Part shown: positions 2,415 through 41,068 of the stretch, one piece after another
How the letters are laid out: each line of letters opens with the position of its first letter
How positions within the stretch are numbered: position 1 is the stretch's first letter
IMG/VR virus record: IMGVR_UViG_3300029984_000001
Location: 199,572 to 263,571 of that record
Reading direction: 5' to 3' (one strand)
Length of the DNA: 64,000 bases
Notes under the pieces: generated by a model
What the model saw: the letters and a program-made list of their open reading frames with translations, nothing else
Told to the model about the DNA's origin: nothing
Database searches by the model: none
Program-made: the position numbers and the translations under genes

Positions 2415-2428
2415 AAGTATCACCTCTT

Positions 2429-3298
2429 CTACCCTAAATATATTTTTTCAGAATAATTCATTAATTGATTTTGAATGTGTTGTTCAATATTTACTATGAA
2501 TGTATCTCCATCTTTACTACAAACTTGTATTTGTCTGCCACCTTCTAACATTGTATAAGAATTATTTAATAAATCAAATGATTCTTTGAAGAAATAAAGA
2601 TTAGCAGATTCTTGTTTTATATATTCTATTATTTGATTATTTGTAACTGGAATTAATATACCAGCATCATTTTCTTGTACTACAAATTTATTTCCAATAT
2701 TCTCTTTACCATGAGCCAATAAAGCATTTTCTGTTACACCAACAATAGAGGTGGTATAGGCTCTCTTATGTGAAGGGTATATAACTCTATCCCAAGTAAT
2801 AATAGTTATATTTTCTACTTCAGCCCCTCTTGAAGTTTGATTGACAGTACCTAATGCTCTTAACGAAAAAGATGGTTTATCTCCATCCATTAAATCTAAA
2901 TTAAATGCTTCACCGTAAGAATTATTCGAACCTTTTATATGAGCTTTGATATCATTACCGTCCACCCAAAACTTAACTATTTTATTACATCTTAAAGATG
3001 GTTCTATAATTTGCTGTCTAGAAATTTCTTTAGACATTGGATGACCTTCTTCTCCATATAAGTTTCCAGTTGCTACTAATTCAGTCAATCTATCAGCTTT
3101 TAAAGCTGGTTTCATTTCCTTATCTGAATAGAATCTTTTGTTTCTATTTTGTATATTCATATCTTGTAATATAACTTCAGCAGTTACTCTTCTACCATCA
3201 TTATCAACTATCTTCATTTCTGTCTCATGCATACATGTAGCAGTTTCTATAATAACATACCCTATTTTCTTATCATAATTATTATAAGTCATACCCAT
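2429..3298 (-). CDS. Prohead core protease (T4 gp21-like)
   Basis: Motifs LQDMNIQNRNKRFY, YGEEGHP (His), SFSLRALG (Ser), WDRVIYPS. Confidence 0.9.
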   Translation of the reverse strand: MGMTYNNYDKKIGYVIIETATCMHETEMKIVDNDGRRVTAEVILQDMNIQNRNKRFYSDKEMKPALKADRLTELVATGNLYGEEGHPMSKEISRQQIIEPSLRCNKIVKFWVDGNDIKAHIKGSNNSYGEAFNLDLMDGDKPSFSLRALGTVNQTSRGAEVENITIITWDRVIYPSHKRAYTTSIVGVTENALLAHGKENIGNKFVVQENDAGILIPVTNNQIIEYIKQESANLYFFKESFDLLNNSYTMLEGGRQIQVCSKDGDTFIVNIEQHIQNQLMNYSEKIYLG

Positions 3299-3371
3299 AA
3301 ATAATAATCCTCCTTTATATATTCTTATTATTATAGTTCAATATCTAAAATCGTTAGGTATCTATATAGGG

Positions 3372-3383
3372 AACTATATAATA
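3372..3383 (+). promoter_or_regulatory. Late promoter AACT-N6-TA
   Basis: aact atataa ta upstream of SD aaagggg. Confidence 0.65.
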
Positions 3384-3410
3384 ATATAAACTTTGAAAGG
3401 GGATGATTTA

Positions 3411-5429: not shown

Positions 5430-5448
5430 TGAAAGGAGATTAAAATAA

Positions 5449-6294
5449 ATGGGATATCTTATGAATCTATTAGAAGTAAAGAGAACAACAGGAAATGGTG
5501 AAGATGAAGATTTAAATGATGGTCAATCAAATAATGATGATGATAGTAATTATAATCTAGATGATGAAACTAATAATGATCCTGAAGGGCAACATGATAT
5601 AGCCGACGGTTCAAATAATTATAACTTAGAAGATGAAACCAATACAAATCCAGAAGATGATAATGGGGGTAATCCTCCTATTGATGATAATAATGTTCCA
5701 GCTTCAGATAATGATCCCGAACACGATACAGTAGATGGTACTAACAACTATAATTTAGAAGATGAAACTAATAAAGATCCAACTCCAGAAGATGATAACG
5801 AAATAGATGATACAAATGCTCCTGATAATAATGATACTAATAACTATAACTTAGAAGATGAAACAAATGGTGAAGACAATACATCATCTGATACAGGTAA
5901 TTTAGATGGAACAGATGGGCAACCTGTAGATCCAGATGCTAAAATAAAAGAAATTGAACAATCTATAGGAACTCTCAATCCAGAGCAATTAAAAGTACAA
6001 AATGTGAATTTGAAGAAGCAATATATAGAACTATATAATAATTGTAGTAATATAATAATGAGATTGAATGATGTTAATAAAAAGAGTGAAACTGAAGAAG
6101 GTTTAGCTTTCGCAATACAAAGTGTTCAAGATCTTAAAAGTATTATATATGATTATCTTATTCATACATATGATACAAAAACATTTGTACAAAATTCTGT
6201 TAATTACACCGAGTATTTAGTTACTCTTAATTCGGTAAATAAATTATTAAATAATCTTAATACTAACAAAAATGTAAATAATGTTAAAAAGTAA
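5449..6294 (+). CDS. Putative prohead scaffold/core protein (acidic, repetitive)
   Basis: D/N-rich N-terminal half, helical C-terminus, immediately upstream of the capsid gene. Confidence 0.5.
   Translation: MGYLMNLLEVKRTTGNGEDEDLNDGQSNNDDDSNYNLDDETNNDPEGQHDIADGSNNYNLEDETNTNPEDDNGGNPPIDDNNVPASDNDPEHDTVDGTNNYNLEDETNKDPTPEDDNEIDDTNAPDNNDTNNYNLEDETNGEDNTSSDTGNLDGTDGQPVDPDAKIKEIEQSIGTLNPEQLKVQNVNLKKQYIELYNNCSNIIMRLNDVNKKSETEEGLAFAIQSVQDLKSIIYDYLIHTYDTKTFVQNSVNYTEYLVTLNSVNKLLNNLNTNKNVNNVKK
5548..5868 (+). repeat. Four copies of NYNL[DE]DETN (aaYtataaYYtagaWgatgaaac)
   Basis: Copies start near 5548, 5617, 5746 and 5842. Confidence 0.85.
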
Positions 6295-11616: not shown

Positions 11617-13536
11617 ATGAAAATCGTAAAGAATAATGTAATTAATAAGGAAGCAACGAGATTATTTCAATCAGAGACATTAAAAGGATTAGCAGAATCA
11701 ATAATAACTTCAGCAGGACCACAAGGATCAGGTACTAAAATAATATTACATTTAGCAAACGATCCAGAGAGTCCTAATAGAAATGTACCTATAGTTAAAT
11801 ATAGTAAAGATGGTCATAGTATCTTAAGTTATATATCTCATTGTGATAATGGAATGCTTTGCAACTCTGTATGTAACGATGTTTATGAAATGACTACTTA
11901 TGTAAAGAAGAAAATTGGAGATAATTCAACCGCTACTGTATGTATGGCTTCACGAATATTTGATAATCTTGTTAAAGTAGAAACCGATACAAAACTTCCT
12001 CCAAGAGAAATAATCAAACAATTTAAAAAAGCTGTTGAAATGATTACAGTTAGAGTAAAAGAAAAAACACAAGAATTTACTCCTGAAGAAGCTTATAATA
12101 TTGCATACATATCTTCTAATGGTGATGAAGAAGTTGCAAATAACATAAAACAAATTTACGAAGAATTTGGTAAAGAAGTATATATAGATATTGGAATTTC
12201 GAATGATGAACAACATAAAATGAAAATAATGGATGGTATGAGTATTAGTACTGGATACAATAGTCCTGCTTATCGAAATGATTTGCAAAAGAATATTGCA
12301 TCTATTCCAAAACCAAGAATATACTATTTCCAAAATATGATTGATACTCCTGCTCAAATTGCATTATTAGCAGCAATTGTTGTAAAAAATATAACAGATC
12401 CTTACAGAACTAATAAATTAGAAAATGTAATTCCTACAGTAATATTAGCACCACAATTAGCTAATGATGCTATCGTTGAATTAAATGAAGTTATTAGACT
12501 TATGCAAATGTATGATAAACCTGAACATATTAAGAACAAACCACCGTTATTAATTGTTACTGGGATATTTGAAGATGAGGCCACAGATGATATTGCTAGA
12601 TTGTGTGGATGTCCTCCTATTAGAAAATATCAAAGTTTAGAACAACTAGAAAAAGATAAAGAATCAGGTAAAGCTCCTACTACTGAAACTATTGTAGATA
12701 ATTGGTATGGAAGTGCTGATGTAGTTGTAGCTGATGCTGTTAGTACTAAATTTATTAATCCATTATTAAAATATACAACTAAAGGTGAAGAGAGAAAAAG
12801 AGTATGTGAACAAAATAAAGAGAAATTTGTTCCTGCTGAAGATGATAATGAAGAAATCTTCAGTGCTCATTATAATTCATTAGTTACTGCATTAGAAGCT
12901 CAATTGGAATTAGAAATAAATAATAATGCTACTATGGATATTACAGGTTCATTAACTAGAAGAATCAATTCATTAAAAGCTAAAGTCGTAGAATATCAAG
13001 TTGGTGGTATTGCAATAGCTGATAGAGATTCTTTAAAAGATTCAGTTTGGGATGCTATAAGAAATTGTAGATCAGCGGCTAAATCTGGTGTTGGATTAGC
13101 ATGTAATATGGAAGGTTATTTTGCTTGTCTAGAAATATTGAACAATACAAAAGCAGATGATGATTCTACAGTTATCAAATTTGTAGAAATGATTCATGAT
13201 TCTTATGTAGAATATATATCTTCATTATATGAATTTACATTTGGTATTGATAAAGATGAATGTTTAAGATTATTAGAAACTAATTCTAGAACAAATGGAA
13301 TAGTAGATTTATCTCAAGGATATGATAAAGAAACTGTAGATAAGGTGATATACAATACAAAAATTAAATCATCTATAAATGCAGATATAGTTACATTAGA
13401 AGCTTTATCTAAAATATTATCTTTAATGATGACATGTGCTCAAACTCTTATACCAGAACCATTATTAGATTCATATACAGCATTTGTAGATAATAGAAAA
13501 ATTCAAGATAAATTAGTTAAAACATGTAGACTATAA
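11617..13536 (+). CDS. groEL: Phage chaperonin (GroEL-like, divergent)
   Basis: SAGPQG, SKDGHSIL, IGDNSTAT (GDGTTT equivalent), AYISSNGD, DAIRNCRSAAKSGV. Confidence 0.9.
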   Translation: MKIVKNNVINKEATRLFQSETLKGLAESIITSAGPQGSGTKIILHLANDPESPNRNVPIVKYSKDGHSILSYISHCDNGMLCNSVCNDVYEMTTYVKKKIGDNSTATVCMASRIFDNLVKVETDTKLPPREIIKQFKKAVEMITVRVKEKTQEFTPEEAYNIAYISSNGDEEVANNIKQIYEEFGKEVYIDIGISNDEQHKMKIMDGMSISTGYNSPAYRNDLQKNIASIPKPRIYYFQNMIDTPAQIALLAAIVVKNITDPYRTNKLENVIPTVILAPQLANDAIVELNEVIRLMQMYDKPEHIKNKPPLLIVTGIFEDEATDDIARLCGCPPIRKYQSLEQLEKDKESGKAPTTETIVDNWYGSADVVVADAVSTKFINPLLKYTTKGEERKRVCEQNKEKFVPAEDDNEEIFSAHYNSLVTALEAQLELEINNNATMDITGSLTRRINSLKAKVVEYQVGGIAIADRDSLKDSVWDAIRNCRSAAKSGVGLACNMEGYFACLEILNNTKADDDSTVIKFVEMIHDSYVEYISSLYEFTFGIDKDECLRLLETNSRTNGIVDLSQGYDKETVDKVIYNTKIKSSINADIVTLEALSKILSLMMTCAQTLIPEPLLDSYTAFVDNRKIQDKLVKTCRL

Positions 13537-19198: not shown

Positions 19199-19534
19199 AT
19201 GAAATATAATAAGTATGAGGATAAGGATATTGATGCTAAGATATTAACGAAAAAGACTATGATATTGTTTGAGTATTTGTCAAATGGAAATGATTTAAAG
19301 GAGGTATTACCAGTCGTTAATAATTTTATATCTTTATGTAATGTAGTCTCTACATCTCAACGTTTTGATGAATTTTGTAGAAATGTAGATGAATCTGTGA
19401 TATCAGATGATTCTATATTAAATCTTTGTTTATACTTGAGAAGAAATTGTTATACTCATGATACAATAAAAATAATATTAGAACAATGGAAAAATGAAAT
19501 TAATGAAATAAAATATAGGAGTGAATTATTATGA
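19199..19534 (+). CDS. Small helical paralog 3
   Basis: LCLYLRRNCYTHDTIKIILEQWKN motif. Confidence 0.7.
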   Translation: MKYNKYEDKDIDAKILTKKTMILFEYLSNGNDLKEVLPVVNNFISLCNVVSTSQRFDEFCRNVDESVISDDSILNLCLYLRRNCYTHDTIKIILEQWKNEINEIKYRSELL

Positions 19535-20460
19535 AAAAAGAATTAACAATCGAGGATAAAAAAATATTAAAGAAAGAAGTTGAAATAGAGGTTAAATATA
19601 AATATGTTTTTGATTCTTTTAAAAATATTATATATAATCTTATAAACTCGCCATATTTAAACGATAAAGATTTTTCAATAAATACTTTTACAAATGATAT
19701 AAGAAATAGAAATCATAGAGACAAAGAATTAATAGAATTTATTAAATTTTTAAGCAGTATAAATAAAAAACAAAAAGAAATAAAAGAAATTTTAATAGAT
19801 TGGAAAGATAGAGTAGATAGTTATGAAAATGAATATACATGTGATCATCTTCCTTCTGATAGTTTAATCGAAATAAAAGATAATATATTTTTCTGTGAAA
19901 GATGTGGTAAAGTATTTGATATAATTCCACAATTACCTAATGAAGATATTAATAATTTCGTTGACAAGTTTAGTTCATTAATAAATGATATGAAGGGACA
20001 AGGTTATTATGATCCAGAAATAGGATTAATTTCAAATAGATATGGTGGTAAAGGAGTTATTTCTAGTATAACAGAAGATTCTATATTATCTCCTCATACA
20101 AATGATGGTACTCCAGTTGAAATAAACATGTCACTAAAACAAATTATGAACAGAATGACAGATGAAGAGTTTATAAAATTTACTGAAAATCTTTTCTTAA
20201 AAAATATAGAGGTTCGTAAATCTAGAATATTAAAAGAAAATTTACCAAGTTTTGAAATTGGTGAGAATAAAAATACAGAATATATACATGATCCTAATTC
20301 TCTAATAGCAAAATGTCTTCATGTTGAATTTCATAAAGATGGAAATAAAATGAATATGACCAAAATAAATGAAGATACATATAAATGTAATATATGTACA
20401 GAAGAGATATCTAGAGATATGTATAAATTATTAAAACTACGTTTTGAAACTAAAAGATAA
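19531..20460 (+). CDS. Mosaic protein: paralog domain, two CxH...CxxC Zn ribbons, and an embedded RNAP beta fragment
   Basis: FIKFLSS...IKEILIDWKD; CDH..CERC and CLH..CNIC; SNRYGGKGVIS...PHTNDGTPVEI...NRM. Confidence 0.75.
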   Translation: MKKELTIEDKKILKKEVEIEVKYKYVFDSFKNIIYNLINSPYLNDKDFSINTFTNDIRNRNHRDKELIEFIKFLSSINKKQKEIKEILIDWKDRVDSYENEYTCDHLPSDSLIEIKDNIFFCERCGKVFDIIPQLPNEDINNFVDKFSSLINDMKGQGYYDPEIGLISNRYGGKGVISSITEDSILSPHTNDGTPVEINMSLKQIMNRMTDEEFIKFTENLFLKNIEVRKSRILKENLPSFEIGENKNTEYIHDPNSLIAKCLHVEFHKDGNKMNMTKINEDTYKCNICTEEISRDMYKLLKLRFETKR

Positions 20461-20511
20461 ATGATTGGGTGTATAAACACCCTTTTATTTTTTTATCTTT
20501 TTCTTCAGTTG

Positions 20512-20523
20512 AACATTTAGATA
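20512..20523 (+). promoter_or_regulatory. Late promoter AACA-N6-TA
   Basis: aaca tttaga ta followed by SD aaggagg. Confidence 0.7.
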
Positions 20524-20546
20524 ATTATGGGAAAGGAGGTTTTATA

Positions 20547-21746
20547 ATGGGTAGTAAATTTATTAATAAAAAATATAATGATACAGTTACTAATTTAGTA
20601 GAAGGTATAAATAATAGATTAAAAAATCCCTATTATATATTTAATGATAGACAACCTACTATTACAGATTATTATAATCAATCAGAATTAGAAACATCAT
20701 TAGATGAACATCTACAACAAGAGTTTGAAGATTTAGGGGATGAATCTCCTATAAGATTCAATAAAATAGAAGACTTAGTATTATATGGAATGCCAAAGTT
20801 AGAAGCTAATTATAATATAACAGAGAATGGTTTTGAATCAGATCAACTTCAAGGAGAAGCTATATTCCTACCTAATACTATAATACCAAAAAAAGGAGAT
20901 TTCTTTAGAATAAAATATTTAAACCAACCTTTATTATTTAAAGTAATCAGTTCTACAATAGATACAATAGATAATCTTAGTAATATATATAAAATTCAAT
21001 GGGTATATGAAAGACCAGATTGTGACGAAATAGAAAAACAAGTTGTTGACAACTTTACTTCTATAACAGAAAACTCGGGTACAGAATATAAATCTGTTAT
21101 AAAGAATTCAGAATATAAATTTATAGAAAAGATAGATGAAGTATTAACAACTTTAAAAGAGTACTATAAAGTATTATTTTATTCTGATAGAGTACAGGCT
21201 TTTATTTTTTCATTTAAACATGATTTTTTCTATGATCCTTATGCAGTAGAATTCATAATTAAACATGATTTAATTAGTACATTAGACGATTATTTATACA
21301 TTACACAACAATGTAGTTTGCATGAAACTTTTGTATTTGAATATGTAAAATCTATATTTACAGCTTTAGAAAAGAAAGATAAGAACCTTGGTAAATATAA
21401 AACGTTTTCTCAGGCTGAATTTATCCAAGATGTATTCGGAGTATTCTCTTTTAGATCAGAACCTTATTATAAAATTCTATATAGAGATTATATGTTTCCA
21501 AATAAGGAGATAATAAATTTCTTAGATGAAGATTTGATCGGTAGAATATCATCAAATACTTTATATAGCGAAGATGAATTAAATTATAGAAATATTATAA
21601 TAAAACATTTTAATAATACTGATATAAAGTTAAATGATGTAGAATGTATCTCAAGTATGCAATATAATACAAGTGTTAATCTATTTTATGAGATAATATT
21701 TGTGATATATATATTAGAAAAGAATGTCAAAATATTATTAAAATAA
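20547..21746 (+). CDS. Virion structural protein (possible neck/head-closure, gp14-like N-terminus)
   Basis: Late promoter; PKKGDFFRI...LFKV motif. Confidence 0.5.
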   Translation: MGSKFINKKYNDTVTNLVEGINNRLKNPYYIFNDRQPTITDYYNQSELETSLDEHLQQEFEDLGDESPIRFNKIEDLVLYGMPKLEANYNITENGFESDQLQGEAIFLPNTIIPKKGDFFRIKYLNQPLLFKVISSTIDTIDNLSNIYKIQWVYERPDCDEIEKQVVDNFTSITENSGTEYKSVIKNSEYKFIEKIDEVLTTLKEYYKVLFYSDRVQAFIFSFKHDFFYDPYAVEFIIKHDLISTLDDYLYITQQCSLHETFVFEYVKSIFTALEKKDKNLGKYKTFSQAEFIQDVFGVFSFRSEPYYKILYRDYMFPNKEIINFLDEDLIGRISSNTLYSEDELNYRNIIIKHFNNTDIKLNDVECISSMQYNTSVNLFYEIIFVIYILEKNVKILLK

Positions 21747-22433: not shown

Positions 22434-22463
22434 TATAGAGCACATTAGTGCTCTATTATTTTA
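22434..22463. terminator. Bidirectional terminator
   Basis: atagagcac-atta-gtgctctat. Confidence 0.7.
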
Positions 22464-22656: not shown

Positions 22657-22863
22657 TTAATAAAATTCTATAGGAGTTAATTTCTTTTGTGTTTGTGGGA
22701 GTATTAAAGTAAAATTATATAATGCTTGTACTGTTTCATTACTAGATACATGAACATTCTTTCCACCTAAATCTATATAGTATCTTTTAGAATTTATATA
22801 TTCATCTAATTCTTTATTAGATTCAATTGTATAAGCTACTTTAGCGGTTAACTGATCACCATC
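22657..22863 (-). CDS. rpoC: RNA polymerase beta' N-terminal subunit, exon 2
   Basis: Begins DGDQ, completing GDY|DGD. Confidence 0.9.
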   Translation of the reverse strand, partial: DGDQLTAKVAYTIESNKELDEYINSKRYYIDLGGKNVHVSSNETVQALYNFTLILPQTQKKLTPIEFY

Positions 22864-22977
22864 CACACATTAACCTATTGTGAACGCAACTTCACCAGAA
22901 GATTTTCATCTTCCCAGACTATATCATCCCTTATGGGCTACCTCTTTCGAATCTATCATAAGCTTATAGATCCTACT

Positions 22978-23850
22978 CTACTCAATATTAAAGTTATATT
23001 TATTTGATATTTCGGTATGAGATTCTTTTCTTTTTATCCTACCAATTATACTTCTTTGTTGTTGAAATTCCCCTGGTAGTTTCAATTCATCTATAATTGC
23101 TCTAGTTGAATATCCTTTAGATAATAATTTACAAATGTTTTCTACATATGGAAAGAAATCTATTTGAGGTTTCTTCTCTTTAAATTTATATAATGTGGAT
23201 ATATGTTTCCATCTTTTACCTTTAATAATATGACTTACATTAAATCTATTATTTTCAGTATTTTCCATATTAGATTTTATTAAAGCATTTCCATATGAAT
23301 CTCCATCTTGAACATATTTGCAAATACTATGTACTTGTTCTTCTGTCCATTTACTCATACCATTATTTTCTCCATAAGTATTTTCTCCAGTACCCCAACC
23401 TCCATCTTCCTTGACAAATCTTGATTCAACATGTTTAGAAAATTCTCTATCTGTATCTTTATTTTGAAACTCATGTTCAAGATTTTCTAGTTGAGTACAC
23501 CATTCTAAATTACCATAGAATGCATCTGATCTACATAAATTTTTATGGTTTACTTGAGTTTTATTTATTGGGTCTGGATTAAATACATACATGGTAGCAA
23601 CCAAAATATGTACAAAGAAAGATTTTCTAGTAGAATCATTTAATTGTAAAGATACTGATAAATATCCATTAGATAGTGCTACCGATAATAAATTACCTTC
23701 TATATTTAAAAATCTACCATAATTACTTATCTTATAACCTGTTCTGATATTATAACATTGTAAATCTACCCATTGTTCTATAGGATTAGGATATTCTATT
23801 AATGGGTTTATACCTTGTGAGAAATCGTCTCTTATCATAAAACTTTTCAT
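22978..23850 (-). CDS. Intron-encoded HNH homing endonuclease (NUMOD4-like N-terminus)
   Basis: YKISNYGR, VHILVA, QVNHKN...NLEWCTQLENLEH; located between intron elements R and S. Confidence 0.92.
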   Translation of the reverse strand: MKSFMIRDDFSQGINPLIEYPNPIEQWVDLQCYNIRTGYKISNYGRFLNIEGNLLSVALSNGYLSVSLQLNDSTRKSFFVHILVATMYVFNPDPINKTQVNHKNLCRSDAFYGNLEWCTQLENLEHEFQNKDTDREFSKHVESRFVKEDGGWGTGENTYGENNGMSKWTEEQVHSICKYVQDGDSYGNALIKSNMENTENNRFNVSHIIKGKRWKHISTLYKFKEKKPQIDFFPYVENICKLLSKGYSTRAIIDELKLPGEFQQQRSIIGRIKRKESHTEISNKYNFNIE

Positions 23851-23866
23851 TTATTCTCATCTCCTT

Positions 23867-23885
23867 TCGTGTATATAATATATAA
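23867..23885 (-). promoter_or_regulatory. Early-type promoter inside the intron, driving the HNH gene
   Basis: Minus strand ttatatattata taca cga followed by SD aaggag. Confidence 0.65.
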
Positions 23886-24094
23886 CTTTAATATCTTTTG
23901 ATAGTCGTTGAACGTTCCCTATACATCATCATATAAGGCTTCGATGCTGATTACCCAATTATTAATCATTCTCAAGCATTCACGCTTATAGTTTCCCATT
24001 ACGTTGTAGCTGATTAACTTACAAGGGCGTTCCAGCAGTTAAGGTAGTTTTTGTTTCGACGCACATCGTCAAGAAGACTACAATGGTGAGGTTT

Positions 24095-25522
24095 ATAGTC
24101 TCCTTCTACTTTTTTGAGATGCAAATTACTGATGTTTAAAGTATCTCTAAATCTAGATGATGTATTAGTACCTATATCTTCCTCTCTTATTTTTGGATAA
24201 TAAGGATAGAATTCATTATTTATATAAATACCTTCTGTTTCTACTGTAGATGAAATTCTAATTTTATTTGGGAATTGACCGAAATAAGTATTCATAGGAT
24301 ATCTTGTTAATAATACATGTTTATCTTTAGACATTTCTACAGCAGCCATATAAAAAATATCACACCAACATAATCTTCTATGATAAATAGATGATACATC
24401 TTCTTTATCCATTTCATCTTTAGTATCTGTATGAGGAGCATTGTTACCTTTAAAGTACATATATCTCATTTCACCTGTAGTTAATTCTACTTCTATAGGA
24501 ATGAATCTATTTGAATATCCATGTATAAATCTTTTCATTTGTTTTTTAATTACATCATCTGAAAATTGCACATAAGGATTCTTTACTTGTACTACTTTAG
24601 GATTACCCTTATCATCATATAATACTTTTTCATTAGTACCACCGAATTCATTTTCAAAGAATCTTCTACACCAGAATAATATATACGGATATAGATTTGC
24701 TAAGGCTGATGCTAACGGTAAAGCACAATGTCTTAAATCAACCATTAAATCATCTACTGATTCTACATTTAATTCAGGAGCCGATATAACTAATCTAGAA
24801 GAATAATCTGAAGTCTTTGCCATAACTGTTCTTTTTATGATTCCATATTTCTTTCCTAGATTTGGTTCTTGAGTAAACCAATCATATACTCTAACTAATA
24901 ATTCCTGTATTCTTCCTATAGTAGCAGATGTCATTGAAAATCCAAAATCATCGGATTCTCTTAATGCAGCTGAGGCTATAATTAAAGAATTATATATCTT
25001 ATTAATTTCTCCTACTCCTAAAGTTTTATTTCCAGTATTTACATCTCTATAGTATGCAGGTATTACTATATACTTATCTAAAAATAATGTATTATTCTTT
25101 TTATTTCTATTTATAAAATCTATATTTATATCTCTTTTGAGAGAGTCTGTAGATTTTATTTTTATCTTATCTATATTATTTTTTAAGAAGTCTACCCCAT
25201 TTTCTCCATTCTCATCTTCTTCTAATTGTCCTTGAGAATTAATCTTAAAATTCTTAGTCCCATGAACACATTCTTTTATTTTTCTATCCATTCTACACCA
25301 TATTTTATATGATAATGGATCTATGAAATTTTTGTGTAGGTCAATATAGGCAAATATATTGGCTCTTTGATCTTTAGATAAACCAAAAACTTCATTAGAT
25401 AATAAACCGTCTGATGTAGGTACTCCATTACTAAAAAAATATATAGGATTGGTAATCTGTTTTAAATTATTCTCTTTAATTAATCGACTAGGACTTAATG
25501 TCTCTAACTCTAAATGTTTCAT
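24095..25522 (-). CDS. rpoC: RNA polymerase beta' N-terminal subunit, exon 1 (probably virion RNAP); spliced product 544 aa
   Basis: DGLLSNEVFG, VIPAYYRD, KTSDYSSRLVIS, VLLTRYP, GDY; in a late structural operon. Confidence 0.9.
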
Positions 25523-25564
25523 ATTAAAACTCCTTTCTCATTTTGATATAAAAAAGGGATCAGG

Positions 25565-25858
25565 TTATACACCTGATACCTCTTTCATTGTTATTCCTAT
25601 AGTATCATTATTAATGTTAAATTCTACCTGATATTTTTTATCATATACAGATGATGCATTGATTACAGGTATTGATTTGGTCTTCTTTTTTAATTCAAAA
25701 TATATAGAATCATCAACTATATTTATGTTTTTCATATTAAAGTCATTAAATAAAGAACAGACTCCATATGATGTCATAATAGCTTCATAATTATTAGCGA
25801 AATATTCACAATCGTTAATATTATTAGATTCTATGAATTTCATTCTATCCATTACCAT
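25565..25858 (-). CDS. Hypothetical protein
   Basis: SD aaggag; in operon. Confidence 0.65.
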   Translation of the reverse strand: MVMDRMKFIESNNINDCEYFANNYEAIMTSYGVCSLFNDFNMKNINIVDDSIYFELKKKTKSIPVINASSVYDKKYQVEFNINNDTIGITMKEVSGV

Positions 25859-29156: not shown

Positions 29157-30890
29157 ATGAAATTAAAAGATATGAAATTTGGTATTAAGGTAGATAATGA
29201 TTGGATTGAATGTGTAATTGGAAATAGTATTTATTATTCAAATAAATTAAGTATAAAATTTGATATTGAGGAAATTCTTGATATTCTTAATATTATAAGT
29301 AATTATTATAAATATACTAAAATAAGTTTTCATGTAGATGAAAACTGCCTTGGATATAAAATAACACATGATACTATTAGTTTATTGGCTGTAGAAATAA
29401 AGCCAGATGAAGAAATGATAAGTTGGATAATTAAAAATAAATCTAATGAATCTTATAATATAGAGATTCTATATAGAGAGCCAACTGTAATGGGGTTTCC
29501 CAATTTTATAAAAGAAAAGAAGAATACAGATAAGATTAAAGAGGAGACGATTAAAATGAAATTAAAAGAAATAATGTTTGGTATTAGATTTAGATCTATA
29601 AAGAGTGAATGTAACTGGCTTAAACGTTTTGATAAAGATGAAGTACTTCCATTGATGTTTGATATTCATATGACATTATACTCTTATAATGAAATAAAAG
29701 TATTTTTATCATTATATAATGAAGATGATATTGATATATGTTATGATGAAGATTGTGTTGGATACAAAATGACCCATAAAGATAGTAATTCAATAACACA
29801 ATTAAGTACTAGAGAATTAAAAGATCTATTTGATTTAGAATATGAAAATAATATACTTGAACCCATATACAATAATGAAGAGATGAAAAGTGATAATAAA
29901 ATGAAATTAAAAGACATGAAATTCTGTATTAAAAATATAAAAATAGATAAATGGGTTGGGAAGATAAAATATCACGAAACCATAGATCATGTAATAGAAT
30001 CAATAACATATGTCGATGATTATGAACATGAATATAATATTGATGAAATATTTGAAATATTTGATACTCAATCAGATATATCAGATTTTGAATTATATTG
30101 TGGTGAAAAATGTATTGGATATAGAATTACCTACGATAATAGTACACATAAATTTACACCTAGCAATTTAGTAGAGTTAGTCAGAATAAGTAAAGAACAA
30201 ATATTAAATTCAACCTATAAAGTTGAAATTGAAGTATTATATAAATGTGATATTATTTATGAAAATAAAGAAATAGAAGGAGATAATATTATAGACGAAA
30301 TTAAATATATTATTATGATAAAAACATGTTGCGATGATTGGGAATTTATTGGATATGAAGGGCAATATTCTTATTATCCAAGGAAAAAAGATATTATTAA
30401 TGCTAGAAAATTTAATAAAGATGATATTGATGTTCATCTAGGGAGAATATTATCATATTGTATGAATTTAGAACCTATAGAAATAAAAATACTAAAATAT
30501 GAAAATAATGGTAATTTAATAGCAAAACAATATAAAGAATTTAAAATTGATGAAGAAGAATTTGTATATAAGAATGATCCTATTATAAAACATATTGTAG
30601 ATTATTATCAAATAGTGCATAAAATAAAAGATTATTCGAAAATAGGTATGTTCCTAGATAGTATATATAATATAGCAATTGATGATAAAAACTATTTTTC
30701 AACATTTATAATAGCTTTATTTGAAGGTTTTCATCCTAAAATAACTCAATATCAAACAGATAAAGATTGTGTTTATAGAAAAATAAAAAATATGGATTTT
30801 GATATAGATGATATAAATAAATTATTTGAACAATCTCCATTAGAATTAAAATTACTAACAGAAATGTACAATTATCAAAATCAAGAATAA
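29157..30890 (+). CDS. Protein with three tandem MKLK[DE]xxF domains
   Basis: Repeat starts at 29157, 29556 and 29901, each with C[LVI]GY[KR]xT. Confidence 0.75.
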   Translation: MKLKDMKFGIKVDNDWIECVIGNSIYYSNKLSIKFDIEEILDILNIISNYYKYTKISFHVDENCLGYKITHDTISLLAVEIKPDEEMISWIIKNKSNESYNIEILYREPTVMGFPNFIKEKKNTDKIKEETIKMKLKEIMFGIRFRSIKSECNWLKRFDKDEVLPLMFDIHMTLYSYNEIKVFLSLYNEDDIDICYDEDCVGYKMTHKDSNSITQLSTRELKDLFDLEYENNILEPIYNNEEMKSDNKMKLKDMKFCIKNIKIDKWVGKIKYHETIDHVIESITYVDDYEHEYNIDEIFEIFDTQSDISDFELYCGEKCIGYRITYDNSTHKFTPSNLVELVRISKEQILNSTYKVEIEVLYKCDIIYENKEIEGDNIIDEIKYIIMIKTCCDDWEFIGYEGQYSYYPRKKDIINARKFNKDDIDVHLGRILSYCMNLEPIEIKILKYENNGNLIAKQYKEFKIDEEEFVYKNDPIIKHIVDYYQIVHKIKDYSKIGMFLDSIYNIAIDDKNYFSTFIIALFEGFHPKITQYQTDKDCVYRKIKNMDFDIDDINKLFEQSPLELKLLTEMYNYQNQE

Positions 30891-30942: not shown

Positions 30943-30955
30943 AGAGGTGATTAAT

Positions 30956-33574
30956 ATGCCAAGATATAACGCTAATGAAATTGTAAATGAATCAAGTAAA
31001 TCAAATGAAAAACATTTATATTTTCTATCTAAAGATAATATGGATAATAAAACATTATATCCTAGAGTACCTGAGAATTATTTCACTAAGAATGGTCATG
31101 AAGATAATGAAACTAAAAGAGTTTGTTTTGCTACTTCTATACATAAAGCATTGATGGCTATTTCTATGAGAATGAAAGATATGATATTATATGTACATGT
31201 CCCTAAAACTATGAATATAGAGACATATAAACCTACAACAAAACAAGTTCCTGATTGTAAGATAACTGGAGAAACATGGGTTACTCATCCTATAGGACTA
31301 AAATGTATAGGGAAAATAAAAGTAATAGATGATTCTGGAAAAGATGGTCATAAATTTAAATACGGGGATAAAGAAGCTGAATTGTATGATTGGGACTGGG
31401 AATGGATTGAGAAGGATAAAGATATTATAAAGGAAAGATCTATAGTGAAAGAAAATCTATTAATTTCCGATAAAGATTTTTCAAATAATTTAGAGAAATG
31501 GGAGGATAGTAATTATCCAGTTTTATTAATCACAGGTCTATCGGGCGGTGGAAAGTCTACATTAGCTAATCAATTAGCTAAAGAATATAAAGCTGATGTA
31601 GTAGAATTAGATCAATTAGAATATAATCATAATAATTCAAAAAATAACTTTCTTAAAAAATTTATGGAAAGCGACTCAAAATATAATCAATATAATCATA
31701 TAAGTGAATATTGGAAAGACAAGAATGATAATACAGATAAAGATAAATTAATAAAAACAGTAAAAGAATATATTCATTTCTGTGTATCTTATGCTTTAAA
31801 GAACAATATTAAAACTATAATAGAAGGTATACAAATATATCAATTAATGTATACTAAAGAGGATTTGATTTATATGACTGATAAACCTATAATAATTATG
31901 GGGTCATCTCCTCTAATATCAAAATTAAGACAATTTAAAAGAATAATAAGTGGAGGTAACGGTGGACAAACATTAAAAACACTTATTCAAGATAATAATT
32001 ATTTAAGTGATTTTAGAAATGACATAAAATCTACAATAAAAGAAACAAAGGAGGATGATGAAATGGGTATTAGATTTAATTTAAATGAAAATAAAGAAAT
32101 TATAGTAAGACCACAATATGAATTATGTTTATTAGAATCAGGAGTATCTTATCAAAAGAAATATAAATGTCCTTATTGTGAAACTAGATTAGATAGACAA
32201 AAACTTATAACTCATATTTTAGATGAGCATGAAGATTTCATACCAGAAAATTATACTGCTACTAGAATTGTATTTAATATAATAAATAAAAAAGAAAAAG
32301 GTAGTTGTGTTATATGTGGTAAAGAAACTTTATGGGATGAGAATAAAGCTAAGTATGATAGATTCTGTTGTGAGAAATGTGTACAAGATTATAGAAAACA
32401 AAGAGATGAAGCTATGATACGAACAAAAGGTAAATTATATGTAACAGATGATCCAGAATTTCAAAAGAAGATGTTAGCTAATAGAGGAATATCTGGAGAA
32501 TATATATGGTCAGATGGAATAAAGAGAACTTATACTGGTAGTTATGAAAAGAAATTATTAGAGTTCTTGGATGAAGTAATGGGATTTAAATCATTGGATG
32601 TTATTACACCAGGTGATACAGTTTTATACGAAGATAATGAAGGTAAAGAACGTGCTTGGATATTGGATGTAACGATTATTCCTTATAATTTACAAATAGA
32701 TGCTAAAGATGGAGGGGATAATCCTAATAATAGAGAGATGCCTGAATATAGGGCTAAACAAACATCAAAAGAGAAAGCCATATTTGAACAAGGTAAATAT
32801 AATTATCTAAGACTTACTAATAATAACTTTGGGCAATTAATAAATACTCTGGCTCAAATTAAATTAAATCTATTAGATAATAAACAAGATAAAATATGGC
32901 ACGTAAATGAATATATGGCTATGAGTGGAGTTAATCCTGTGGTTACTAAAACAGCAGATTCTAAACCAGTATCTTACATAGTTCCTTGTATGATTCAAAA
33001 TTCATTTGTAGAGCCATTATATTCTAGAGATCAATATTTAGAAAAATTATATAGAATTGTAGATGGTAAATTAATATTAACTAATAGATCTGAAGTTAAG
33101 AAACAATTCGATGTATCTACTAAACTATTAAAATCTAGTGTAGCTGATAAAGTAAAAATCGGTATAGATGAATTAATTACTAAAGAACAATATGTAGATC
33201 ATAACATGATGTTTGAAATGTTAACAGGTCATCAATTATTAGATAAGAATCAATATTTCTTTGACGAGAATTTAGAGGTGGAATTGGAGGGTTTTTATAA
33301 ATCTAAAATAAGAAGGGATATTATAGAAGCTACTTTTTCAAATCTTCTAAATCAATATAAAGTATCTATTTGTGAGAATGCTCATAATATTAAATATAAA
33401 AATTTGACAATATTAAGAGATAATAAAGGATTCTATGCTTATAATGAAGAAACGAATAAAAGAACTGGAAGTTATGAATTAATAAACGAGATACCAGATG
33501 AAGTATTGGATTTATTGAATGATGATGATTTCTTAGATACAGATGATGATTTTAACTTTGAAGAAATCAGTTAG
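30956..33574 (+). CDS. Multidomain protein: ART-like domain, P-loop kinase, Zn fingers, PD-(D/E)xK-like nuclease
   Basis: LYPRVP...RVCFATS...DCKITGETW; ITGLSGGGKST; CPYC..H..H and CVIC..FCCEKC; YE...ILD...QIDAKD. Confidence 0.7.
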   Translation: MPRYNANEIVNESSKSNEKHLYFLSKDNMDNKTLYPRVPENYFTKNGHEDNETKRVCFATSIHKALMAISMRMKDMILYVHVPKTMNIETYKPTTKQVPDCKITGETWVTHPIGLKCIGKIKVIDDSGKDGHKFKYGDKEAELYDWDWEWIEKDKDIIKERSIVKENLLISDKDFSNNLEKWEDSNYPVLLITGLSGGGKSTLANQLAKEYKADVVELDQLEYNHNNSKNNFLKKFMESDSKYNQYNHISEYWKDKNDNTDKDKLIKTVKEYIHFCVSYALKNNIKTIIEGIQIYQLMYTKEDLIYMTDKPIIIMGSSPLISKLRQFKRIISGGNGGQTLKTLIQDNNYLSDFRNDIKSTIKETKEDDEMGIRFNLNENKEIIVRPQYELCLLESGVSYQKKYKCPYCETRLDRQKLITHILDEHEDFIPENYTATRIVFNIINKKEKGSCVICGKETLWDENKAKYDRFCCEKCVQDYRKQRDEAMIRTKGKLYVTDDPEFQKKMLANRGISGEYIWSDGIKRTYTGSYEKKLLEFLDEVMGFKSLDVITPGDTVLYEDNEGKERAWILDVTIIPYNLQIDAKDGGDNPNNREMPEYRAKQTSKEKAIFEQGKYNYLRLTNNNFGQLINTLAQIKLNLLDNKQDKIWHVNEYMAMSGVNPVVTKTADSKPVSYIVPCMIQNSFVEPLYSRDQYLEKLYRIVDGKLILTNRSEVKKQFDVSTKLLKSSVADKVKIGIDELITKEQYVDHNMMFEMLTGHQLLDKNQYFFDENLEVELEGFYKSKIRRDIIEATFSNLLNQYKVSICENAHNIKYKNLTILRDNKGFYAYNEETNKRTGSYELINEIPDEVLDLLNDDDFLDTDDDFNFEEIS

Positions 33575-39676: not shown

Positions 39677-41068
39677 ATGGGAATTTTATGTGATCAAGAA
39701 ATAATAAAAGCTGTGGAAAAAGGATATATATATATTGAAGGGTTCAATCCAAACAGAGAATATGATGGTAAAGGAGGATATAACGGTAGACTTGGACCTA
39801 ATAGCTATGATTTAAGTTTAAATGAAAAAATATTAATATATACAGATATTCCATTAGATATGAAAAAGAAAAATGAAACTAAAGAATTATTTATTCCAAA
39901 GGAAGGTCTAATATTATATCCAGGTAAATTATATTTAGCTATGACAAATGAATATACAAAGACTGATAATTATGTACCTATAATAGAGGGTAGGTCATCT
40001 GGTGCAAGACTAGGTATTCAAGTACATTCAGCTGGATTTGGAGATAATGGCTTCAGTGGCAGATGGACATTAGAGATAACTGTGGCTCACCCAGTAAGAA
40101 TATATGCAGGTGTCAATATATGTCAAATATATTTTCAAACACTTAAAGGAAAATCTAACAATAAGTATAATGGAAAGTATAATGACTCTAAAGATGTATT
40201 GGCTACTAAAATGTATGATGATGAGATATTTCAAACTGTTAAAGATCTAAATAGAGTATCAGTATCAGATAAAAGCATTTCATCTATGTTACGAAAAGAT
40301 GATTGTCCTAAAAAATTTGATACAACAGATAATGATAATTTTTCTATAGACTTTAGTATAAAAGGTGAGGGTGCAATATCCAAATTCATGGAACAATATA
40401 AATCCGAAATGATACAAGGATTTATAGATAATGAAAAACATAATAAATTATTAAAAGACCAAAAGAAAAAAGAACCTATTAAGTCAAATCCTTTAGGTTT
40501 CGAAACATTCTTTTATGGTGTAACACAAAAACCTAAATGGTTTAAAGCTGTTACAAATGTTAAAACTACAAAAGAAATAGAAGATGAATGGGTTGATAAA
40601 AGTGATAAACCTTTTGCAAATATTAGTAAAAGACTTAGTGATATAATTTCAAATCTAGAGACATCGATTAATGAATCTAATGCTCCTGTATCTTATAGAT
40701 TACAAGATCATGATACATCTATAATGGAATTTGTAGAACCAACAGGTGATATATTACCATTCATACTTGAAGCTGCTGGAGTGAATCGATTATTTATACA
40801 AGAGTTAGCCCAACAAGATGATAAAAAACAAATAAAAGAAATCAAAGATATGATACATGAAAATATAGAAAGATATAAAGCTTATGGTACAACTAAATTT
40901 GATGTAAAAGATTTGTTAACAGGGAAAGACATAGTTCTTGATATTTCCAATATTACATATAAAGATATAACTATATTATTGACAAACAATCAAACATTTG
41001 TAATTCAATTTACTGATGATAATATAACTGTAAGTCTAAAAGATTTTCTATTATCAATAGTTGGTTGA
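39677..41068 (+). CDS. dcd: dCTP deaminase with long C-terminal extension
   Basis: GPNSYDL, EGRSSGARLG, GFGDNGFSGRWTLE, ICQIYF, YNGKY. Confidence 0.9.
   Translation: MGILCDQEIIKAVEKGYIYIEGFNPNREYDGKGGYNGRLGPNSYDLSLNEKILIYTDIPLDMKKKNETKELFIPKEGLILYPGKLYLAMTNEYTKTDNYVPIIEGRSSGARLGIQVHSAGFGDNGFSGRWTLEITVAHPVRIYAGVNICQIYFQTLKGKSNNKYNGKYNDSKDVLATKMYDDEIFQTVKDLNRVSVSDKSISSMLRKDDCPKKFDTTDNDNFSIDFSIKGEGAISKFMEQYKSEMIQGFIDNEKHNKLLKDQKKKEPIKSNPLGFETFFYGVTQKPKWFKAVTNVKTTKEIEDEWVDKSDKPFANISKRLSDIISNLETSINESNAPVSYRLQDHDTSIMEFVEPTGDILPFILEAAGVNRLFIQELAQQDDKKQIKEIKDMIHENIERYKAYGTTKFDVKDLLTGKDIVLDISNITYKDITILLTNNQTFVIQFTDDNITVSLKDFLLSIVG

What the first reader, a model, noticed from the sequence alone, without database searches (positions are those of the whole stretch)
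22657..25522. Group I intron splits the catalytic DY|DGD motif of the RNAP beta' subunit
Seen: exon 1 ends GAC TAT at 24095 and exon 2 starts GAT GGT GAT at 22863. P1, P10 and P/Q/R/S are all identifiable, and splicing restores GDYDGD in a 544-aa protein. The preceding residues (KKVEG) depart from canonical NADFDGD. The ORF track mis-calls both exons. Its place in a late baseplate operon suggests the virion RNAP, so packaging an active enzyme depends on splicing.
Basis: seen in the sequence. Interest (0 to 1): 0.65.

Follow-up and report, generated by a model that had tools for sequence, protein, structure and literature searches.

The report
Group I intron in phage RNAP gene
A self-splicing group I intron carrying a homing-endonuclease gene interrupts the catalytic-site codons of a jumbo phage's virion RNA polymerase beta'-N gene; the call is correct, but such introns at this motif are already annotated in related jumbo phages.

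Summary
On the minus strand, exon 1 (25522-24095, 476 codons, ends GDY) and exon 2 (22863-22657, 68 codons, starts DGD) are separated by a 1231-nt insert (24094-22864).

Evidence that the insert is a group I intron:
- U at -1 in a G.U pair.
- An 11-bp P1 and an 8-bp P10 on one internal guide.
- P2-P9.1 in canonical order, and a terminal G.
- An Rfam RF00028 hit on P4-P7 (33.6 bits, E 2e-6, below the gathering score of 50).
- A 290-aa I-HmuI-like HNH homing-endonuclease ORF.

Ten intron-less homologues are collinear across the junction to the base. A relative with 82% identity carries the same intron without the ORF at the same site, with compensatory changes in P10, P2, P5a, P7.2 and P9.1.

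The protein is the orthologue of AR9 gp145, the virion RNAP beta'-N subunit and a late gene. The non-virion paralogue lies elsewhere in the genome.

The "baseplate operon" premise was not confirmed. D[YF]DGD without N-A is normal for this family.

Introns at this motif are annotated in AR9 (DYD|GD) and Staphylococcus phage Madawaska (DFDG|D). I also found one, unannotated, in Serratia phage 2050HW (DFDG|D). This is a new member of a known kind. Splicing itself was not observed.

The parts
24095..25522 (-). Exon 1 of the virion-RNAP beta'-N gene (476 codons, ends ...KKVEGDY)
   Evidence: sequence, ORF. PHROG 2986 at 6.7e-59, profile 8-484. tblastn to AR9 g145 at 3e-61. Profile A1 hits bacterial and AR9 beta' chains in PDB.
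22864..24094 (-). Group I intron, 1231 nt, with terminal G at 22864. G+C of the RNA cores is 0.36-0.39 against 0.26 for the window.
   Evidence: Homologous ORF-less intron at the same site in L007.
24073..24089 (-). Internal guide sequence. 24083-24073 pairs with the exon 1 end (P1, U.G at the splice site). 24089-24082 pairs with the first 8 nt of exon 2 (P10).
   Evidence: P10 has a compensatory change in L007 (UCUCCAUU / GAUGGAGA). P1 has one in L022 (GCAGACUAU / GUAGUCUGC).
24056..24072 (-). P2 hairpin (UUGACG / CGUCGA)
   Evidence: A-U changes to G-C in L007.
23901..24047 (-). Catalytic core, 5' half: P3 5' strand (24047-24041), P4 (24037-24032 / 23950-23945), P5, P5a (24018-24011 / 23968-23961), P6 (23938-23932 / 23923-23917), J6/7, and P7 5' strand (23906-23901)
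   Evidence: Rfam RF00028 model positions 60-148, 33.6 bits, E 2.2e-6. Helix table. blastn hits at 70-79% identity to intron cores in 62 phage records.
22978..23850 (-). Intron ORF: 290-aa HNH homing endonuclease (NUMOD4 + HNH), with its own AAAGGAG ribosome-binding site. Its stop codon lies inside the conserved GAGUAGAGUAG intron element.
   Evidence: PHROG 59 at 8.2e-29 and PHROG 959 at 6.6e-21. Pfam NUMOD4 and HNH_3, both below cut-off. I-HmuI 1U3E at E 0.004. The ORF is absent from the L007 intron.
22880..22973 (-). Catalytic core, 3' half: P7.2 (22973-22966 / 22956-22949), P3' (22944-22938), P8 (22937-22935 / 22930-22928), P7' (22922-22917), P9 with GAAA loop (22914-22908 / 22903-22897), and P9.1 (22895-22891 / 22884-22880)
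   Evidence: helix table. Compensatory changes against L007 in P7.2 and P9.1 (two pairs). P8 is replaced by a different 6-bp hairpin in L007.
22657..22863 (-). Exon 2 (68 codons plus stop, starts DGDQLTAKV...)
   Evidence: PHROG 2986 profile 486-535. Collinear with intact homologues.
22435..22456 (.). Terminator-like hairpin, read on both strands, downstream of exon 2
   Evidence: consensus scan only.
25559..25577 (-). Terminator-like hairpin just upstream of the gene's ribosome-binding site and start codon
   Evidence: consensus scan only.

Best explanation
The window is the last 64 kb of a 263.6-kb AR9/PBS1-like jumbo phage genome from peat. Its gene for the N-terminal part of the virion RNA polymerase beta' subunit is interrupted by a mobile group I intron. 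The insertion lies between the Tyr codon and the second Asp codon of the metal-binding D-Y-D-G-D motif.

Proposed mechanism:
1. The gene is transcribed as one pre-mRNA.
2. The intron's internal guide pairs first with the end of exon 1 (P1, U.G at the cleavage site) and then with the start of exon 2 (P10).
3. The P3-P9 core catalyses the two transesterifications and joins ...GGAGACUAU to GAUGGUGAU...
4. This restores a 544-aa beta'-N with all three catalytic Asp.
5. Unspliced RNA yields a 502-aa product lacking two of the three Asp, so active virion polymerase depends on splicing.
6. The intron also carries an I-HmuI-like HNH endonuclease gene in the peripheral region between P7 and P3'. That enzyme most likely nicks the intron-less DYDGD-coding site of co-infecting relatives and drives homing.

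Shown here: sequence anatomy, collinearity with intact genes, homologous introns with compensatory changes, and orthology to AR9 gp145.

Inferred: actual self-splicing, endonuclease activity and target, late expression, and packaging into virions.
For: Junction.
- Exon 1 matches PHROG 2986 positions 8-484 and exon 2 matches 486-535.
- Intact homologues L009, L010, L011, L012, L013, L014, L015, L016, L018, L021 and Goe21 continue across the same base.

RNA.
- RF00028 hit on P4-P7, E 2.2e-6.
- All of P1-P10 are present in canonical order.
- P1 and P10 together were reached by 5e-6 of shuffles.
- Core G+C is 0.36-0.39 against 0.26 for the window.

Comparative.
- L007 (host gene 82% aa identity) has a 441-nt ORF-less version at the identical site.
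- Compensatory changes against L007 occur in P10, P2, P5a, P7.2 and P9.1. L022 changes P1 and P4 compensatorily.
- Intron core identity to L007 (82-89%) is close to exon identity (77-81%).

Endonuclease. PHROG 59 at 8e-29 and I-HmuI at 0.004.

Protein identity.
- Profile A1 hits AR9 nvRNAP beta' at 4e-12 and E. coli beta' residues 452-516, which I recall hold NADFDGD.
- Best phage hit is AR9 g145, a virion RNAP subunit and late gene.
- The nvRNAP paralogue is a separate gene.

Precedent.
- Group I introns within 6 nt of this site in AR9 (RF00028 86.7 bits), Madawaska and Serratia 2050HW.
- PhiPA3 gp210 intron in a vRNAP gene (PMC11620839).
Against: - No RNA evidence. All 24 runs that hold the locus are peat runs listed as DNA, none on record as RNA, and contigs show only the intron-containing DNA form.
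- The Rfam score is below the family's gathering threshold (33.6 against 50). It covers only the 5' half of the core, and the ORF-less L007 copy also reaches only 42.9 bits.
- The 3' half of the structure rests on my own helix assignment, compared across three lineages only.
- Pfam HNH_3 and NUMOD4 are below their cut-offs.
- Virion location is by orthology only.
Confidence: 0.9

Rival explanations
1. This is a truly split gene with no splicing. The 502-aa ORF and the 69-aa GTG ORF are translated separately and assemble, as the beta' N and C parts of jumbo phage RNAPs do.
For: Jumbo phage beta and beta' are naturally split into separate genes (PMC7598289). The ORF track gives two open frames.
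Against: - The catalytic Asp triad would be divided between two chains.
- The GTG 'start' is the last three bases of a structured intron and has no ribosome-binding site.
- The natural beta' split site lies after the DPBB domain, at the end of exon 2, not here.
- The insert has a full group I anatomy, with P1 and P10 tied to these exact exon ends.
- Ten relatives have the gene uninterrupted.
Confidence: 0.03
2. This is a decayed or splicing-incompetent intron. The gene is a pseudogene, or splicing needs a protein cofactor, so the virion RNAP subunit is not made from this copy alone.
For: Sub-threshold Rfam score. The P7.1 region next to the ORF differs from that of L007. No RNA data.
Against: - Every core helix, the U.G pair and the terminal G are intact.
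- Changes relative to L007 are compensatory rather than disruptive.
- Both exons keep their frame and the family's invariant residues.
- The record is rated complete, and no second vRNAP beta'-N copy was found in the genome.
- The same phage sequence is present in many peat samples.
Confidence: 0.05
3. It is a group I intron, but with a different splice junction, for example the AR9 site (DYD|GD) or the Madawaska site (DFDG|D).
For: Neighbouring sites 3 and 6 nt downstream are used in AR9, Madawaska, L019/L020 and Serratia 2050HW.
Against: - The window DNA has GAC TAT followed directly by AAACC, and GTG followed by GAT GGT GAT.
- Any other register gives a stop or a frameshift.
- P1 puts the U.G pair at 24095, and P10 starts at 22863.
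Confidence: 0.02

Closest known systems
Bacillus phage AR9 g145 (virion RNAP beta'-N), second intron, with homing endonuclease g146
   Same: - Orthologous host gene (33% aa identity).
- Group I intron (RF00028, 86.7 bits) inside the same DYDGD codons.
- Carries an endonuclease ORF.
- The host gene is a late vRNAP gene.
   Different: - The AR9 site is DYD|GD, 3 nt downstream.
- Its ORF is annotated 'Hef-like', not an I-HmuI-like HNH, and sits elsewhere in the intron.
- AR9 has an additional upstream intron that scores as group II.
- The window gene has one intron.
Group I introns at DFDG|D: Staphylococcus phage Madawaska gp113 / HE gp114, IMG/VR loci L019/L020, and Serratia phage 2050HW RpoBC
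   Same: - Same gene family and same catalytic motif.
- The 5' intron core is 73-74% identical to the window's intron in Madawaska and 2050HW.
   Different: - Insertion is 6 nt downstream, after GGT.
- The Madawaska ORF lies 5' of the core.
- The 2050HW and L019/L020 introns have no ORF.
IMG/VR locus L007 (IMGVR_UViG_3300030294_000015) and L022/L023 introns
   Same: - Identical insertion site DY|DGD.
- L007 is the same intron: 82-89% core identity and the same IGS.
   Different: They lack the endonuclease ORF (441 nt and 388 nt). The P8 and P9 peripheral parts differ. L022/L023 appear to end in A rather than G.
PhiPA3 gp210 intron in the vRNAP beta gene gp211/209 (Birkholz et al. 2024, PMC11620839)
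   Same: A putative group I intron with an HNH nicking endonuclease, inserted at conserved catalytic-region Asp codons of a jumbo phage virion RNAP gene. The endonuclease targets the intron-less allele of a competitor.
   Different: The host gene is the beta subunit, not beta'. The phage is a chimallivirus of Pseudomonas. Activity was shown by experiment there and not here.
SPO1 DNA polymerase intron and I-HmuI (PDB 1U3E)
   Same: The intron ORF aligns with I-HmuI over its NUMOD4-like N-terminus and HNH motif. It is a phage group I intron in an essential polymerase gene.
   Different: Weak similarity (E 0.004). The host gene is different. The window ORF is 290 aa against 174 aa.

Membership tests
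Group I intron (Rfam RF00028) | 5' splice site after a U that forms a U.G wobble in P1 with an internal guide sequence | tested here: met
   Exon GGAGACUAU plus AA pairs with UUGUAGUCUUC, 11 contiguous pairs with U.G at 24095. 1.4e-4 of shuffles reach this.
Group I intron (Rfam RF00028) | Terminal G, and P10 pairing of the guide with the 3' exon | tested here: met
   G at 22864. UCACCAUU / GAUGGUGA gives 8 pairs. There is a compensatory A/U swap in L007.
Group I intron (Rfam RF00028) | Conserved core P3-P4-P5-P6-P7-P8-P9 in order, with the P3/P7 pseudoknot and the R/S sequence elements | tested here: met
   All helices were located. P4-P6, J6/7 and the P7 5' strand were matched by the covariance model. 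The 3' half is assigned by hand, with compensatory support from L007 and L022.
Group I intron (Rfam RF00028) | Score at or above Rfam's gathering threshold (50 bits) | tested here: not met
   33.6 bits, local match to model positions 60-148 only. The 882-nt ORF block and the P7.1/P7.2 extension interrupt the model. ORF-less L007 reaches 42.9 bits. The AR9 intron at the neighbouring site reaches 86.7 bits.
Group I intron (Rfam RF00028) | Self-splicing with guanosine cofactor | not testable with these tools
   No run on record as RNA holds the locus.
HNH homing endonuclease (I-HmuI-like) | HNH motif with an N-terminal NUMOD4-type module | tested here: met
   PHROG 59 at 8.2e-29 and PHROG 959 at 6.6e-21. 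Alignment to 1U3E covers ...VNHKN...GNLEW.TQ.EN. Pfam HNH_3 (18.6 against 24.8) and NUMOD4 (20.2 against 23.4) are below their cut-offs.
HNH homing endonuclease (I-HmuI-like) | Site-specific nicking of the intron-less allele | not testable with these tools
   Inferred from I-HmuI and PhiPA3 gp210.
Multisubunit RNAP beta' (N-terminal part, DPBB with DxDGD) | Sequence homology to beta', including the metal-binding D-x-D-G-D loop | tested here: met
   Profile A1 hits 7S00_d at 4.4e-12 and E. coli beta' residues 452-516 at 4.6e-6. D475 is in exon 1 and DGD is in exon 2. No Pfam Rpb1 family hit for exon 1.
Jumbo phage virion RNAP (vRNAP), beta'-N subunit | Orthology to a subunit shown to belong to the virion enzyme, distinct from the nvRNAP paralogue | tested here: met
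   The only AR9 place hit is g145 (3e-61), annotated as vRNAP and listed as late in PMC5312081. The genome's other beta'-N (63085-65915) matches the solved nvRNAP chains, and the window gene does not at E<=1.
Jumbo phage virion RNAP (vRNAP), beta'-N subunit | Physical presence in virions and late transcription | not testable with these tools
   Metagenomic phage; there are no proteomic or transcript data.

The most novel reading that the evidence does not exclude
The 15 nt that encode D-[YF]-D-G-D of jumbo phage beta' genes may be a multi-entry hotspot. Three different insertion points within 6 nt are occupied by related group I introns with different, or no, endonuclease cargo:
- DY|DGD: this window, L007, L022/L023.
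- DYD|GD: AR9.
- DFDG|D: Madawaska, L019/L020, Serratia 2050HW.

These phages infect both Gram-positive and Gram-negative hosts. On this reading, the window's HNH enzyme would be an active inter-phage weapon that disables the virion polymerase gene of intron-less relatives, as PhiPA3 gp210 does to PhiKZ. The window/L007 pair would capture a recent gain or loss of the endonuclease in an otherwise vertically inherited intron.
Probability: 0.3. Interest if true: 0.45.

Novelty: new member of a known kind. Interest (0 to 1): 0.27.

Why it matters
For annotation, the two ORF calls should be merged into one 544-aa vRNAP beta'-N gene with an intron and a separate homing-endonuclease gene. The same correction applies to unannotated cases such as Serratia phage 2050HW RpoBC.

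Biologically, it adds an uncultivated peat phage to the list of jumbo phages whose virion polymerase can only be made after RNA self-splicing. The ORF-containing and ORF-less intron pair, together with three adjacent insertion sites in one catalytic motif, is useful material for studying the homing cycle and endonuclease-mediated competition between phages. It does not reveal a new kind of element.

Tried and rejected
- Rfam at gathering thresholds over the whole window: nothing. Only the permissive local search finds the core.
- Pfam on exon 1 and exon 2: no RNAP family. Single-sequence search of exon 1 against PDB: nothing. A family profile was needed.
- Sequencing runs: 24 peat runs, none on record as RNA. 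Four runs whose word share (~0.64) suggested an intron-less allele were laid on 3401 bases. They gave only fragmented low-depth contigs that include the intron. The single reported joint (22825 to 25101, 24-nt sides) belongs to unrelated long contigs, so there is neither a spliced nor an intron-less form.
- IMG/VR pattern scan for the guide sequence plus J2/3: this recovered only the loci already known, plus one chance match (L027).
- Looking for the nvRNAP paralogue with the vRNAP profile: only marginal hits. PHROG and PDB searches then resolved it.
- Baseplate context: PHROG, Pfam and tblastn on the neighbours found a virion structural protein (20469-21746), major head protein, GroEL and primase, but no baseplate protein.
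- AR9-type early promoter core TATATTAT, 25 nt upstream of the endonuclease ORF: the motif occurs 69 times against 49.7 expected in the window, so this single site is not evidence.
Exons were searched separately by reference. The only constructed sequence was an ORF-deleted intron RNA, used locally for folding.
- The large protein searches were not used because the family scans settled the protein's identity.
Full report
**Where the window lies**

The window is bases 199572-263571 of a 263,571-bp IMG/VR virus record rated complete. The DNA is found almost word for word in many peat metagenome runs. The window is 25.7% G+C. Its closest cultured relatives are the AR9/PBS1-like jumbo phages of Bacillus, Listeria phage LPJP1 and the Staphylococcus jumbo phages, at about 31-35% protein identity for the gene in question.

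**The observation**

On the minus strand the reading frame that starts at 25522 runs ...KKVEGDY up to the T at 24095. It then continues for 26 unrelated codons to a stop at 24014-24016.

A 290-aa ORF lies at 23850-22978. At 22863 the sequence GAT GGT GAT opens a 68-codon frame that ends at 22657.

The ORF list calls this last frame from a GTG at 22866, which is made of the last three bases of the insert. Exon lengths of 476 and 68 codons give the 544 aa stated. I did not build the joined protein; each exon was searched by reference.

**Is the junction real?**

- PHROG 2986 ("RNA polymerase beta subunit", 539 positions) matches exon 1 over positions 8-484 (6.7e-59) and exon 2 over positions 486-535 (1.1e-6). 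In that call exon 1 was submitted one residue short, without its final Tyr, so the two pieces abut in the family profile.
- A scan of IMG/VR with exon 1 gave 18 related loci.
- In ten of them (L009, L010, L011, L012, L013, L014, L015, L016, L018, L021), and in Bacillus phage Goe21, the gene is uninterrupted.
- In each of these, the base after the codon aligned to Tyr476 is the first base of the codon aligned to Asp1 of exon 2. They read GGDYDGDQV, GADYDGDSV, GMDFDGDTA and similar.
- No other register in the window gives an open frame.

**Is the insert a group I intron?**

1. Covariance model. The Rfam group I model matches 24037-23902 (minus strand) over model positions 60-148, which cover P4, P5, P6, J6/7 and the 5' strand of P7. 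The score is 33.6 bits, E 2.2e-6. This is below the gathering score of 50, and the whole-window scan at gathering thresholds finds nothing. The model is broken by an 882-nt ORF block and by a peripheral extension between P7 and P3'.
2. Canonical helices. With the ORF block removed for local folding only (intron positions 230-1111), every canonical element is present in order:
   - P1 (11 pairs, U.G at the splice site), P10 (8 pairs) and P2.
   - P3 (CUACCUU / GAGGUAG), P4, P5, P5a and P6.
   - P7 (GACUAU / AUAGUC), a P7.2 hairpin and P8.
   - P9 with a GAAA loop, P9.1 and the terminal G.
3. Chance. Shuffling the first 45 intron bases reproduces the P1 value in 1.4e-4 of trials, the P10 value in 0.033, and both in 5e-6.
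4. Composition. The RNA cores are 36-39% G+C against 26% around them.
5. Relatives in other phages. The 5' core is 70-79% identical to segments of 62 phage records. Several of these lie in genes annotated as intron-disrupted.

**Comparative support**

L007 has a host gene 82% identical in protein. It carries a 441-nt insert at exactly the same position, with the same guide sequence and core but no ORF. Differences between the two introns are compensatory:

| Helix | Window | L007 |
|---|---|---|
| P10 | UCACCAUU / GAUGGUGA | UCUCCAUU / GAUGGAGA |
| P2 | A-U | G-C |
| P5a | C-G | U-A |
| P7.2 | C-G | U-A |
| P9.1 | two pairs, G-C and A-U | A-U and G-C |

P8 is replaced by a different hairpin.

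L022/L023 carry a more distant 388-nt intron at the same site, with compensatory changes in P1 (GCAGACUAU / GUAGUCUGC) and P4.

Core identity to L007 (82-89%) is close to exon identity (77-81%). This fits inheritance of the intron along with the gene, and gain or loss of the ORF in one lineage.

The ORF block sits between ...ACACGAA and GAGUAGAGUAG. The stop codon of the ORF lies inside that conserved element.

**The intron ORF**

The 290-aa protein matches HNH endonuclease PHROGs (59 at 8.2e-29, 959 at 6.6e-21). It also matches Pfam NUMOD4 and HNH_3 just under their cut-offs, and the solved I-HmuI nicking endonuclease of phage SPO1 (1U3E, E 0.004).

It has its own AAAGGAG ribosome-binding site. 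By analogy it is a homing endonuclease. Activity and target are inferred.

**What the host gene is**

- A profile of exon 1 plus six intact IMG/VR homologues hits the beta' chain of the AR9 non-virion polymerase (7S00_d, 4.4e-12) and bacterial beta'. The hit includes E. coli residues 452-516, which from my own knowledge contain NADFDGD.
- The protein ends about 60 residues after the motif. This is the known natural split site of jumbo phage beta' (PMC7598289). It is therefore beta'-N, not a whole beta'.
- In AR9 the only place hit is g145 (3e-61). GenBank annotates g145 as the virion RNAP beta'-N subunit, and PMC5312081 lists it among the late vRNAP genes gp078, gp125, gp145, gp189 and gp264.
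- The same genome has a second beta'-N at 63085-65915 (PHROG 2987). That copy, and not the window gene, matches the solved non-virion enzymes of AR9 (1.5e-35) and phiKZ (9.4e-11).

So the virion assignment is supported by orthology.

Neighbours include a virion structural protein on the other strand, a major head protein, GroEL and a primase. The upstream minus-strand genes match nothing informative, and terminator-like hairpins bracket the gene.

**How it most likely works**

The pre-mRNA folds so that the guide sequence presents the U.G pair at 24095. Guanosine attack releases exon 1. The guide then holds exon 2 through P10, and exon ligation restores GDY-DGD. Without splicing, the product lacks two of the three metal-binding Asp.

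The endonuclease would nick intron-less DYDGD-coding alleles in co-infecting relatives and copy the intron in. These steps follow from established group I and HNH homing biology and from PhiPA3 gp210 (PMC11620839). None was observed here. No run on record as RNA holds the locus, and the four DNA runs laid on 3401 bases showed only the intron-containing form.

**Comparison with what is known**

- Jumbo phage RNAP genes are known to be frequently intron-disrupted (bioRxiv 10.1101/2020.12.14.422802).
- AR9 g145 itself has two introns. The second is a full-scoring group I intron (86.7 bits) inserted at DYD|GD, 3 nt downstream of the window's site.
- Madawaska gp113, L019/L020 and Serratia phage 2050HW RpoBC are split at DFDG|D, 6 nt downstream. 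The 2050HW gene is annotated as two CDS.
- The motif D[YF]DGD without the bacterial N-A prefix is the family norm.

The finding is therefore a correct call of a new member of a known kind. The modest added value is the exact site, the ORF-plus and ORF-less pair, and the picture of three adjacent entry points in one catalytic motif.

**Verdict**

- Observation: confirmed.
- Interpretation: supported, apart from the operon argument and the implied unusualness.
- Confidence that this is a splicing-competent group I intron with the stated junction: about 0.9.
- Interest: about 0.27.

Noticed in passing
Same genome, outside the window: G000:C1:63085-65915 (+) = L033 186-3019: The non-virion RNAP beta'-N paralogue (PHROG 2987; 7S01_d at 1.5e-35) is also interrupted. 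The break follows ...LLNRNP, and the insert is about 1.3 kb. The insert shows group I core motifs (P4 strands, TTCAACGACTATC, GAGTAGAGTAG, TATATAGTC) and a 261-aa HNH ORF 25.6% identical to the window's endonuclease. Exon 2 probably resumes at TIAYGS... upstream of AADFDGD. cmscan gave no hit at E<=0.01.
   Followed up: partly
L004 (AR9 KU878088.1 117500-123300), 2948-3032 and 4272-4445, minus strand: The first intron of AR9 g145 scores as a group II intron (RF02004 at 80.7 bits, RF00029 at 55.2 bits), although the GenBank note on its ORF g147 says 'group I intron VSR'.
   Followed up: partly
L036 (Serratia phage 2050HW MF285618.1), locus 2209-3956, minus strand: Two CDS, both annotated 'RpoBC' (00313 and 00314), are one beta'-like gene. 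It is split at NCDFDG|DMLGG by an ORF-less group I intron of about 270 nt whose guide GCCGUC pairs with GACGGU. The intron is not annotated in the record.
   Followed up: partly
L022 and L023, 5819-6206: The 388-nt intron at DY|DGD in these IMG/VR phages appears to end in A (...CTACCA|GATGGC) rather than the canonical terminal G. No alternative in-frame junction was found.
   Followed up: no
L019, L020, L022, L023 around 5250-5650; AR9 g145 near residue 413: A second recurrent insertion point lies in the same gene near the conserved T-R-Y-P (bacterial NRAP) motif, about residues 410-414 in window numbering. In L019 and L022 the insert there scores above the Rfam group I cut-off (71.1 and 77 bits).
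   Followed up: partly
window 19531-20460 (+): A 309-aa ORF has weak similarity to RNAP beta (Pfam RNA_pol_Rpb2_6 at E 0.005; PHROG 3295 at 7e-5). It is directly followed by a virion structural protein gene (20469-21746, PHROG 3013). There is no tblastn match in the phage collection. It is possibly a diverged beta-like subunit fragment.
   Followed up: partly
window 30947-33574 (+): An 875-aa protein has a P-loop NTPase region around residues 181-278, and a segment at 405-638 that matches an endonuclease PHROG (15137, 3.2e-35). It could be a fusion or an inserted nuclease module.
   Followed up: no
G000:C1:103633-103753 (+), 30382-30478 (+), 186667-186780 (-): Three further sub-threshold RF00028 matches lie elsewhere in the genome (28.1, 23.1 and 17.2 bits). 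cmscan did not reproduce them at E<=0.01, so further introns remain possible but unconfirmed.
   Followed up: partly
window 23875-23882 (-): TATATTAT, the core of the AR9-type early promoter motif, lies 25 nt upstream of the endonuclease start codon. This recalls the early promoter inside the AR9 g189 intron. However, the motif occurs 69 times in the window against 49.7 expected, so this is only a weak lead.
   Followed up: partly
window 11617-13536 (+) and 39677-41068 (+): A GroEL-like chaperonin (PHROG 5725, 8.9e-39) and a dCTP-deaminase-like domain with a C-terminal extension of about 280 aa. Both fit an AR9-like jumbo phage; AR9 also encodes a GroEL (g228) and, as its papers state, has dU-containing DNA.
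   Followed up: no
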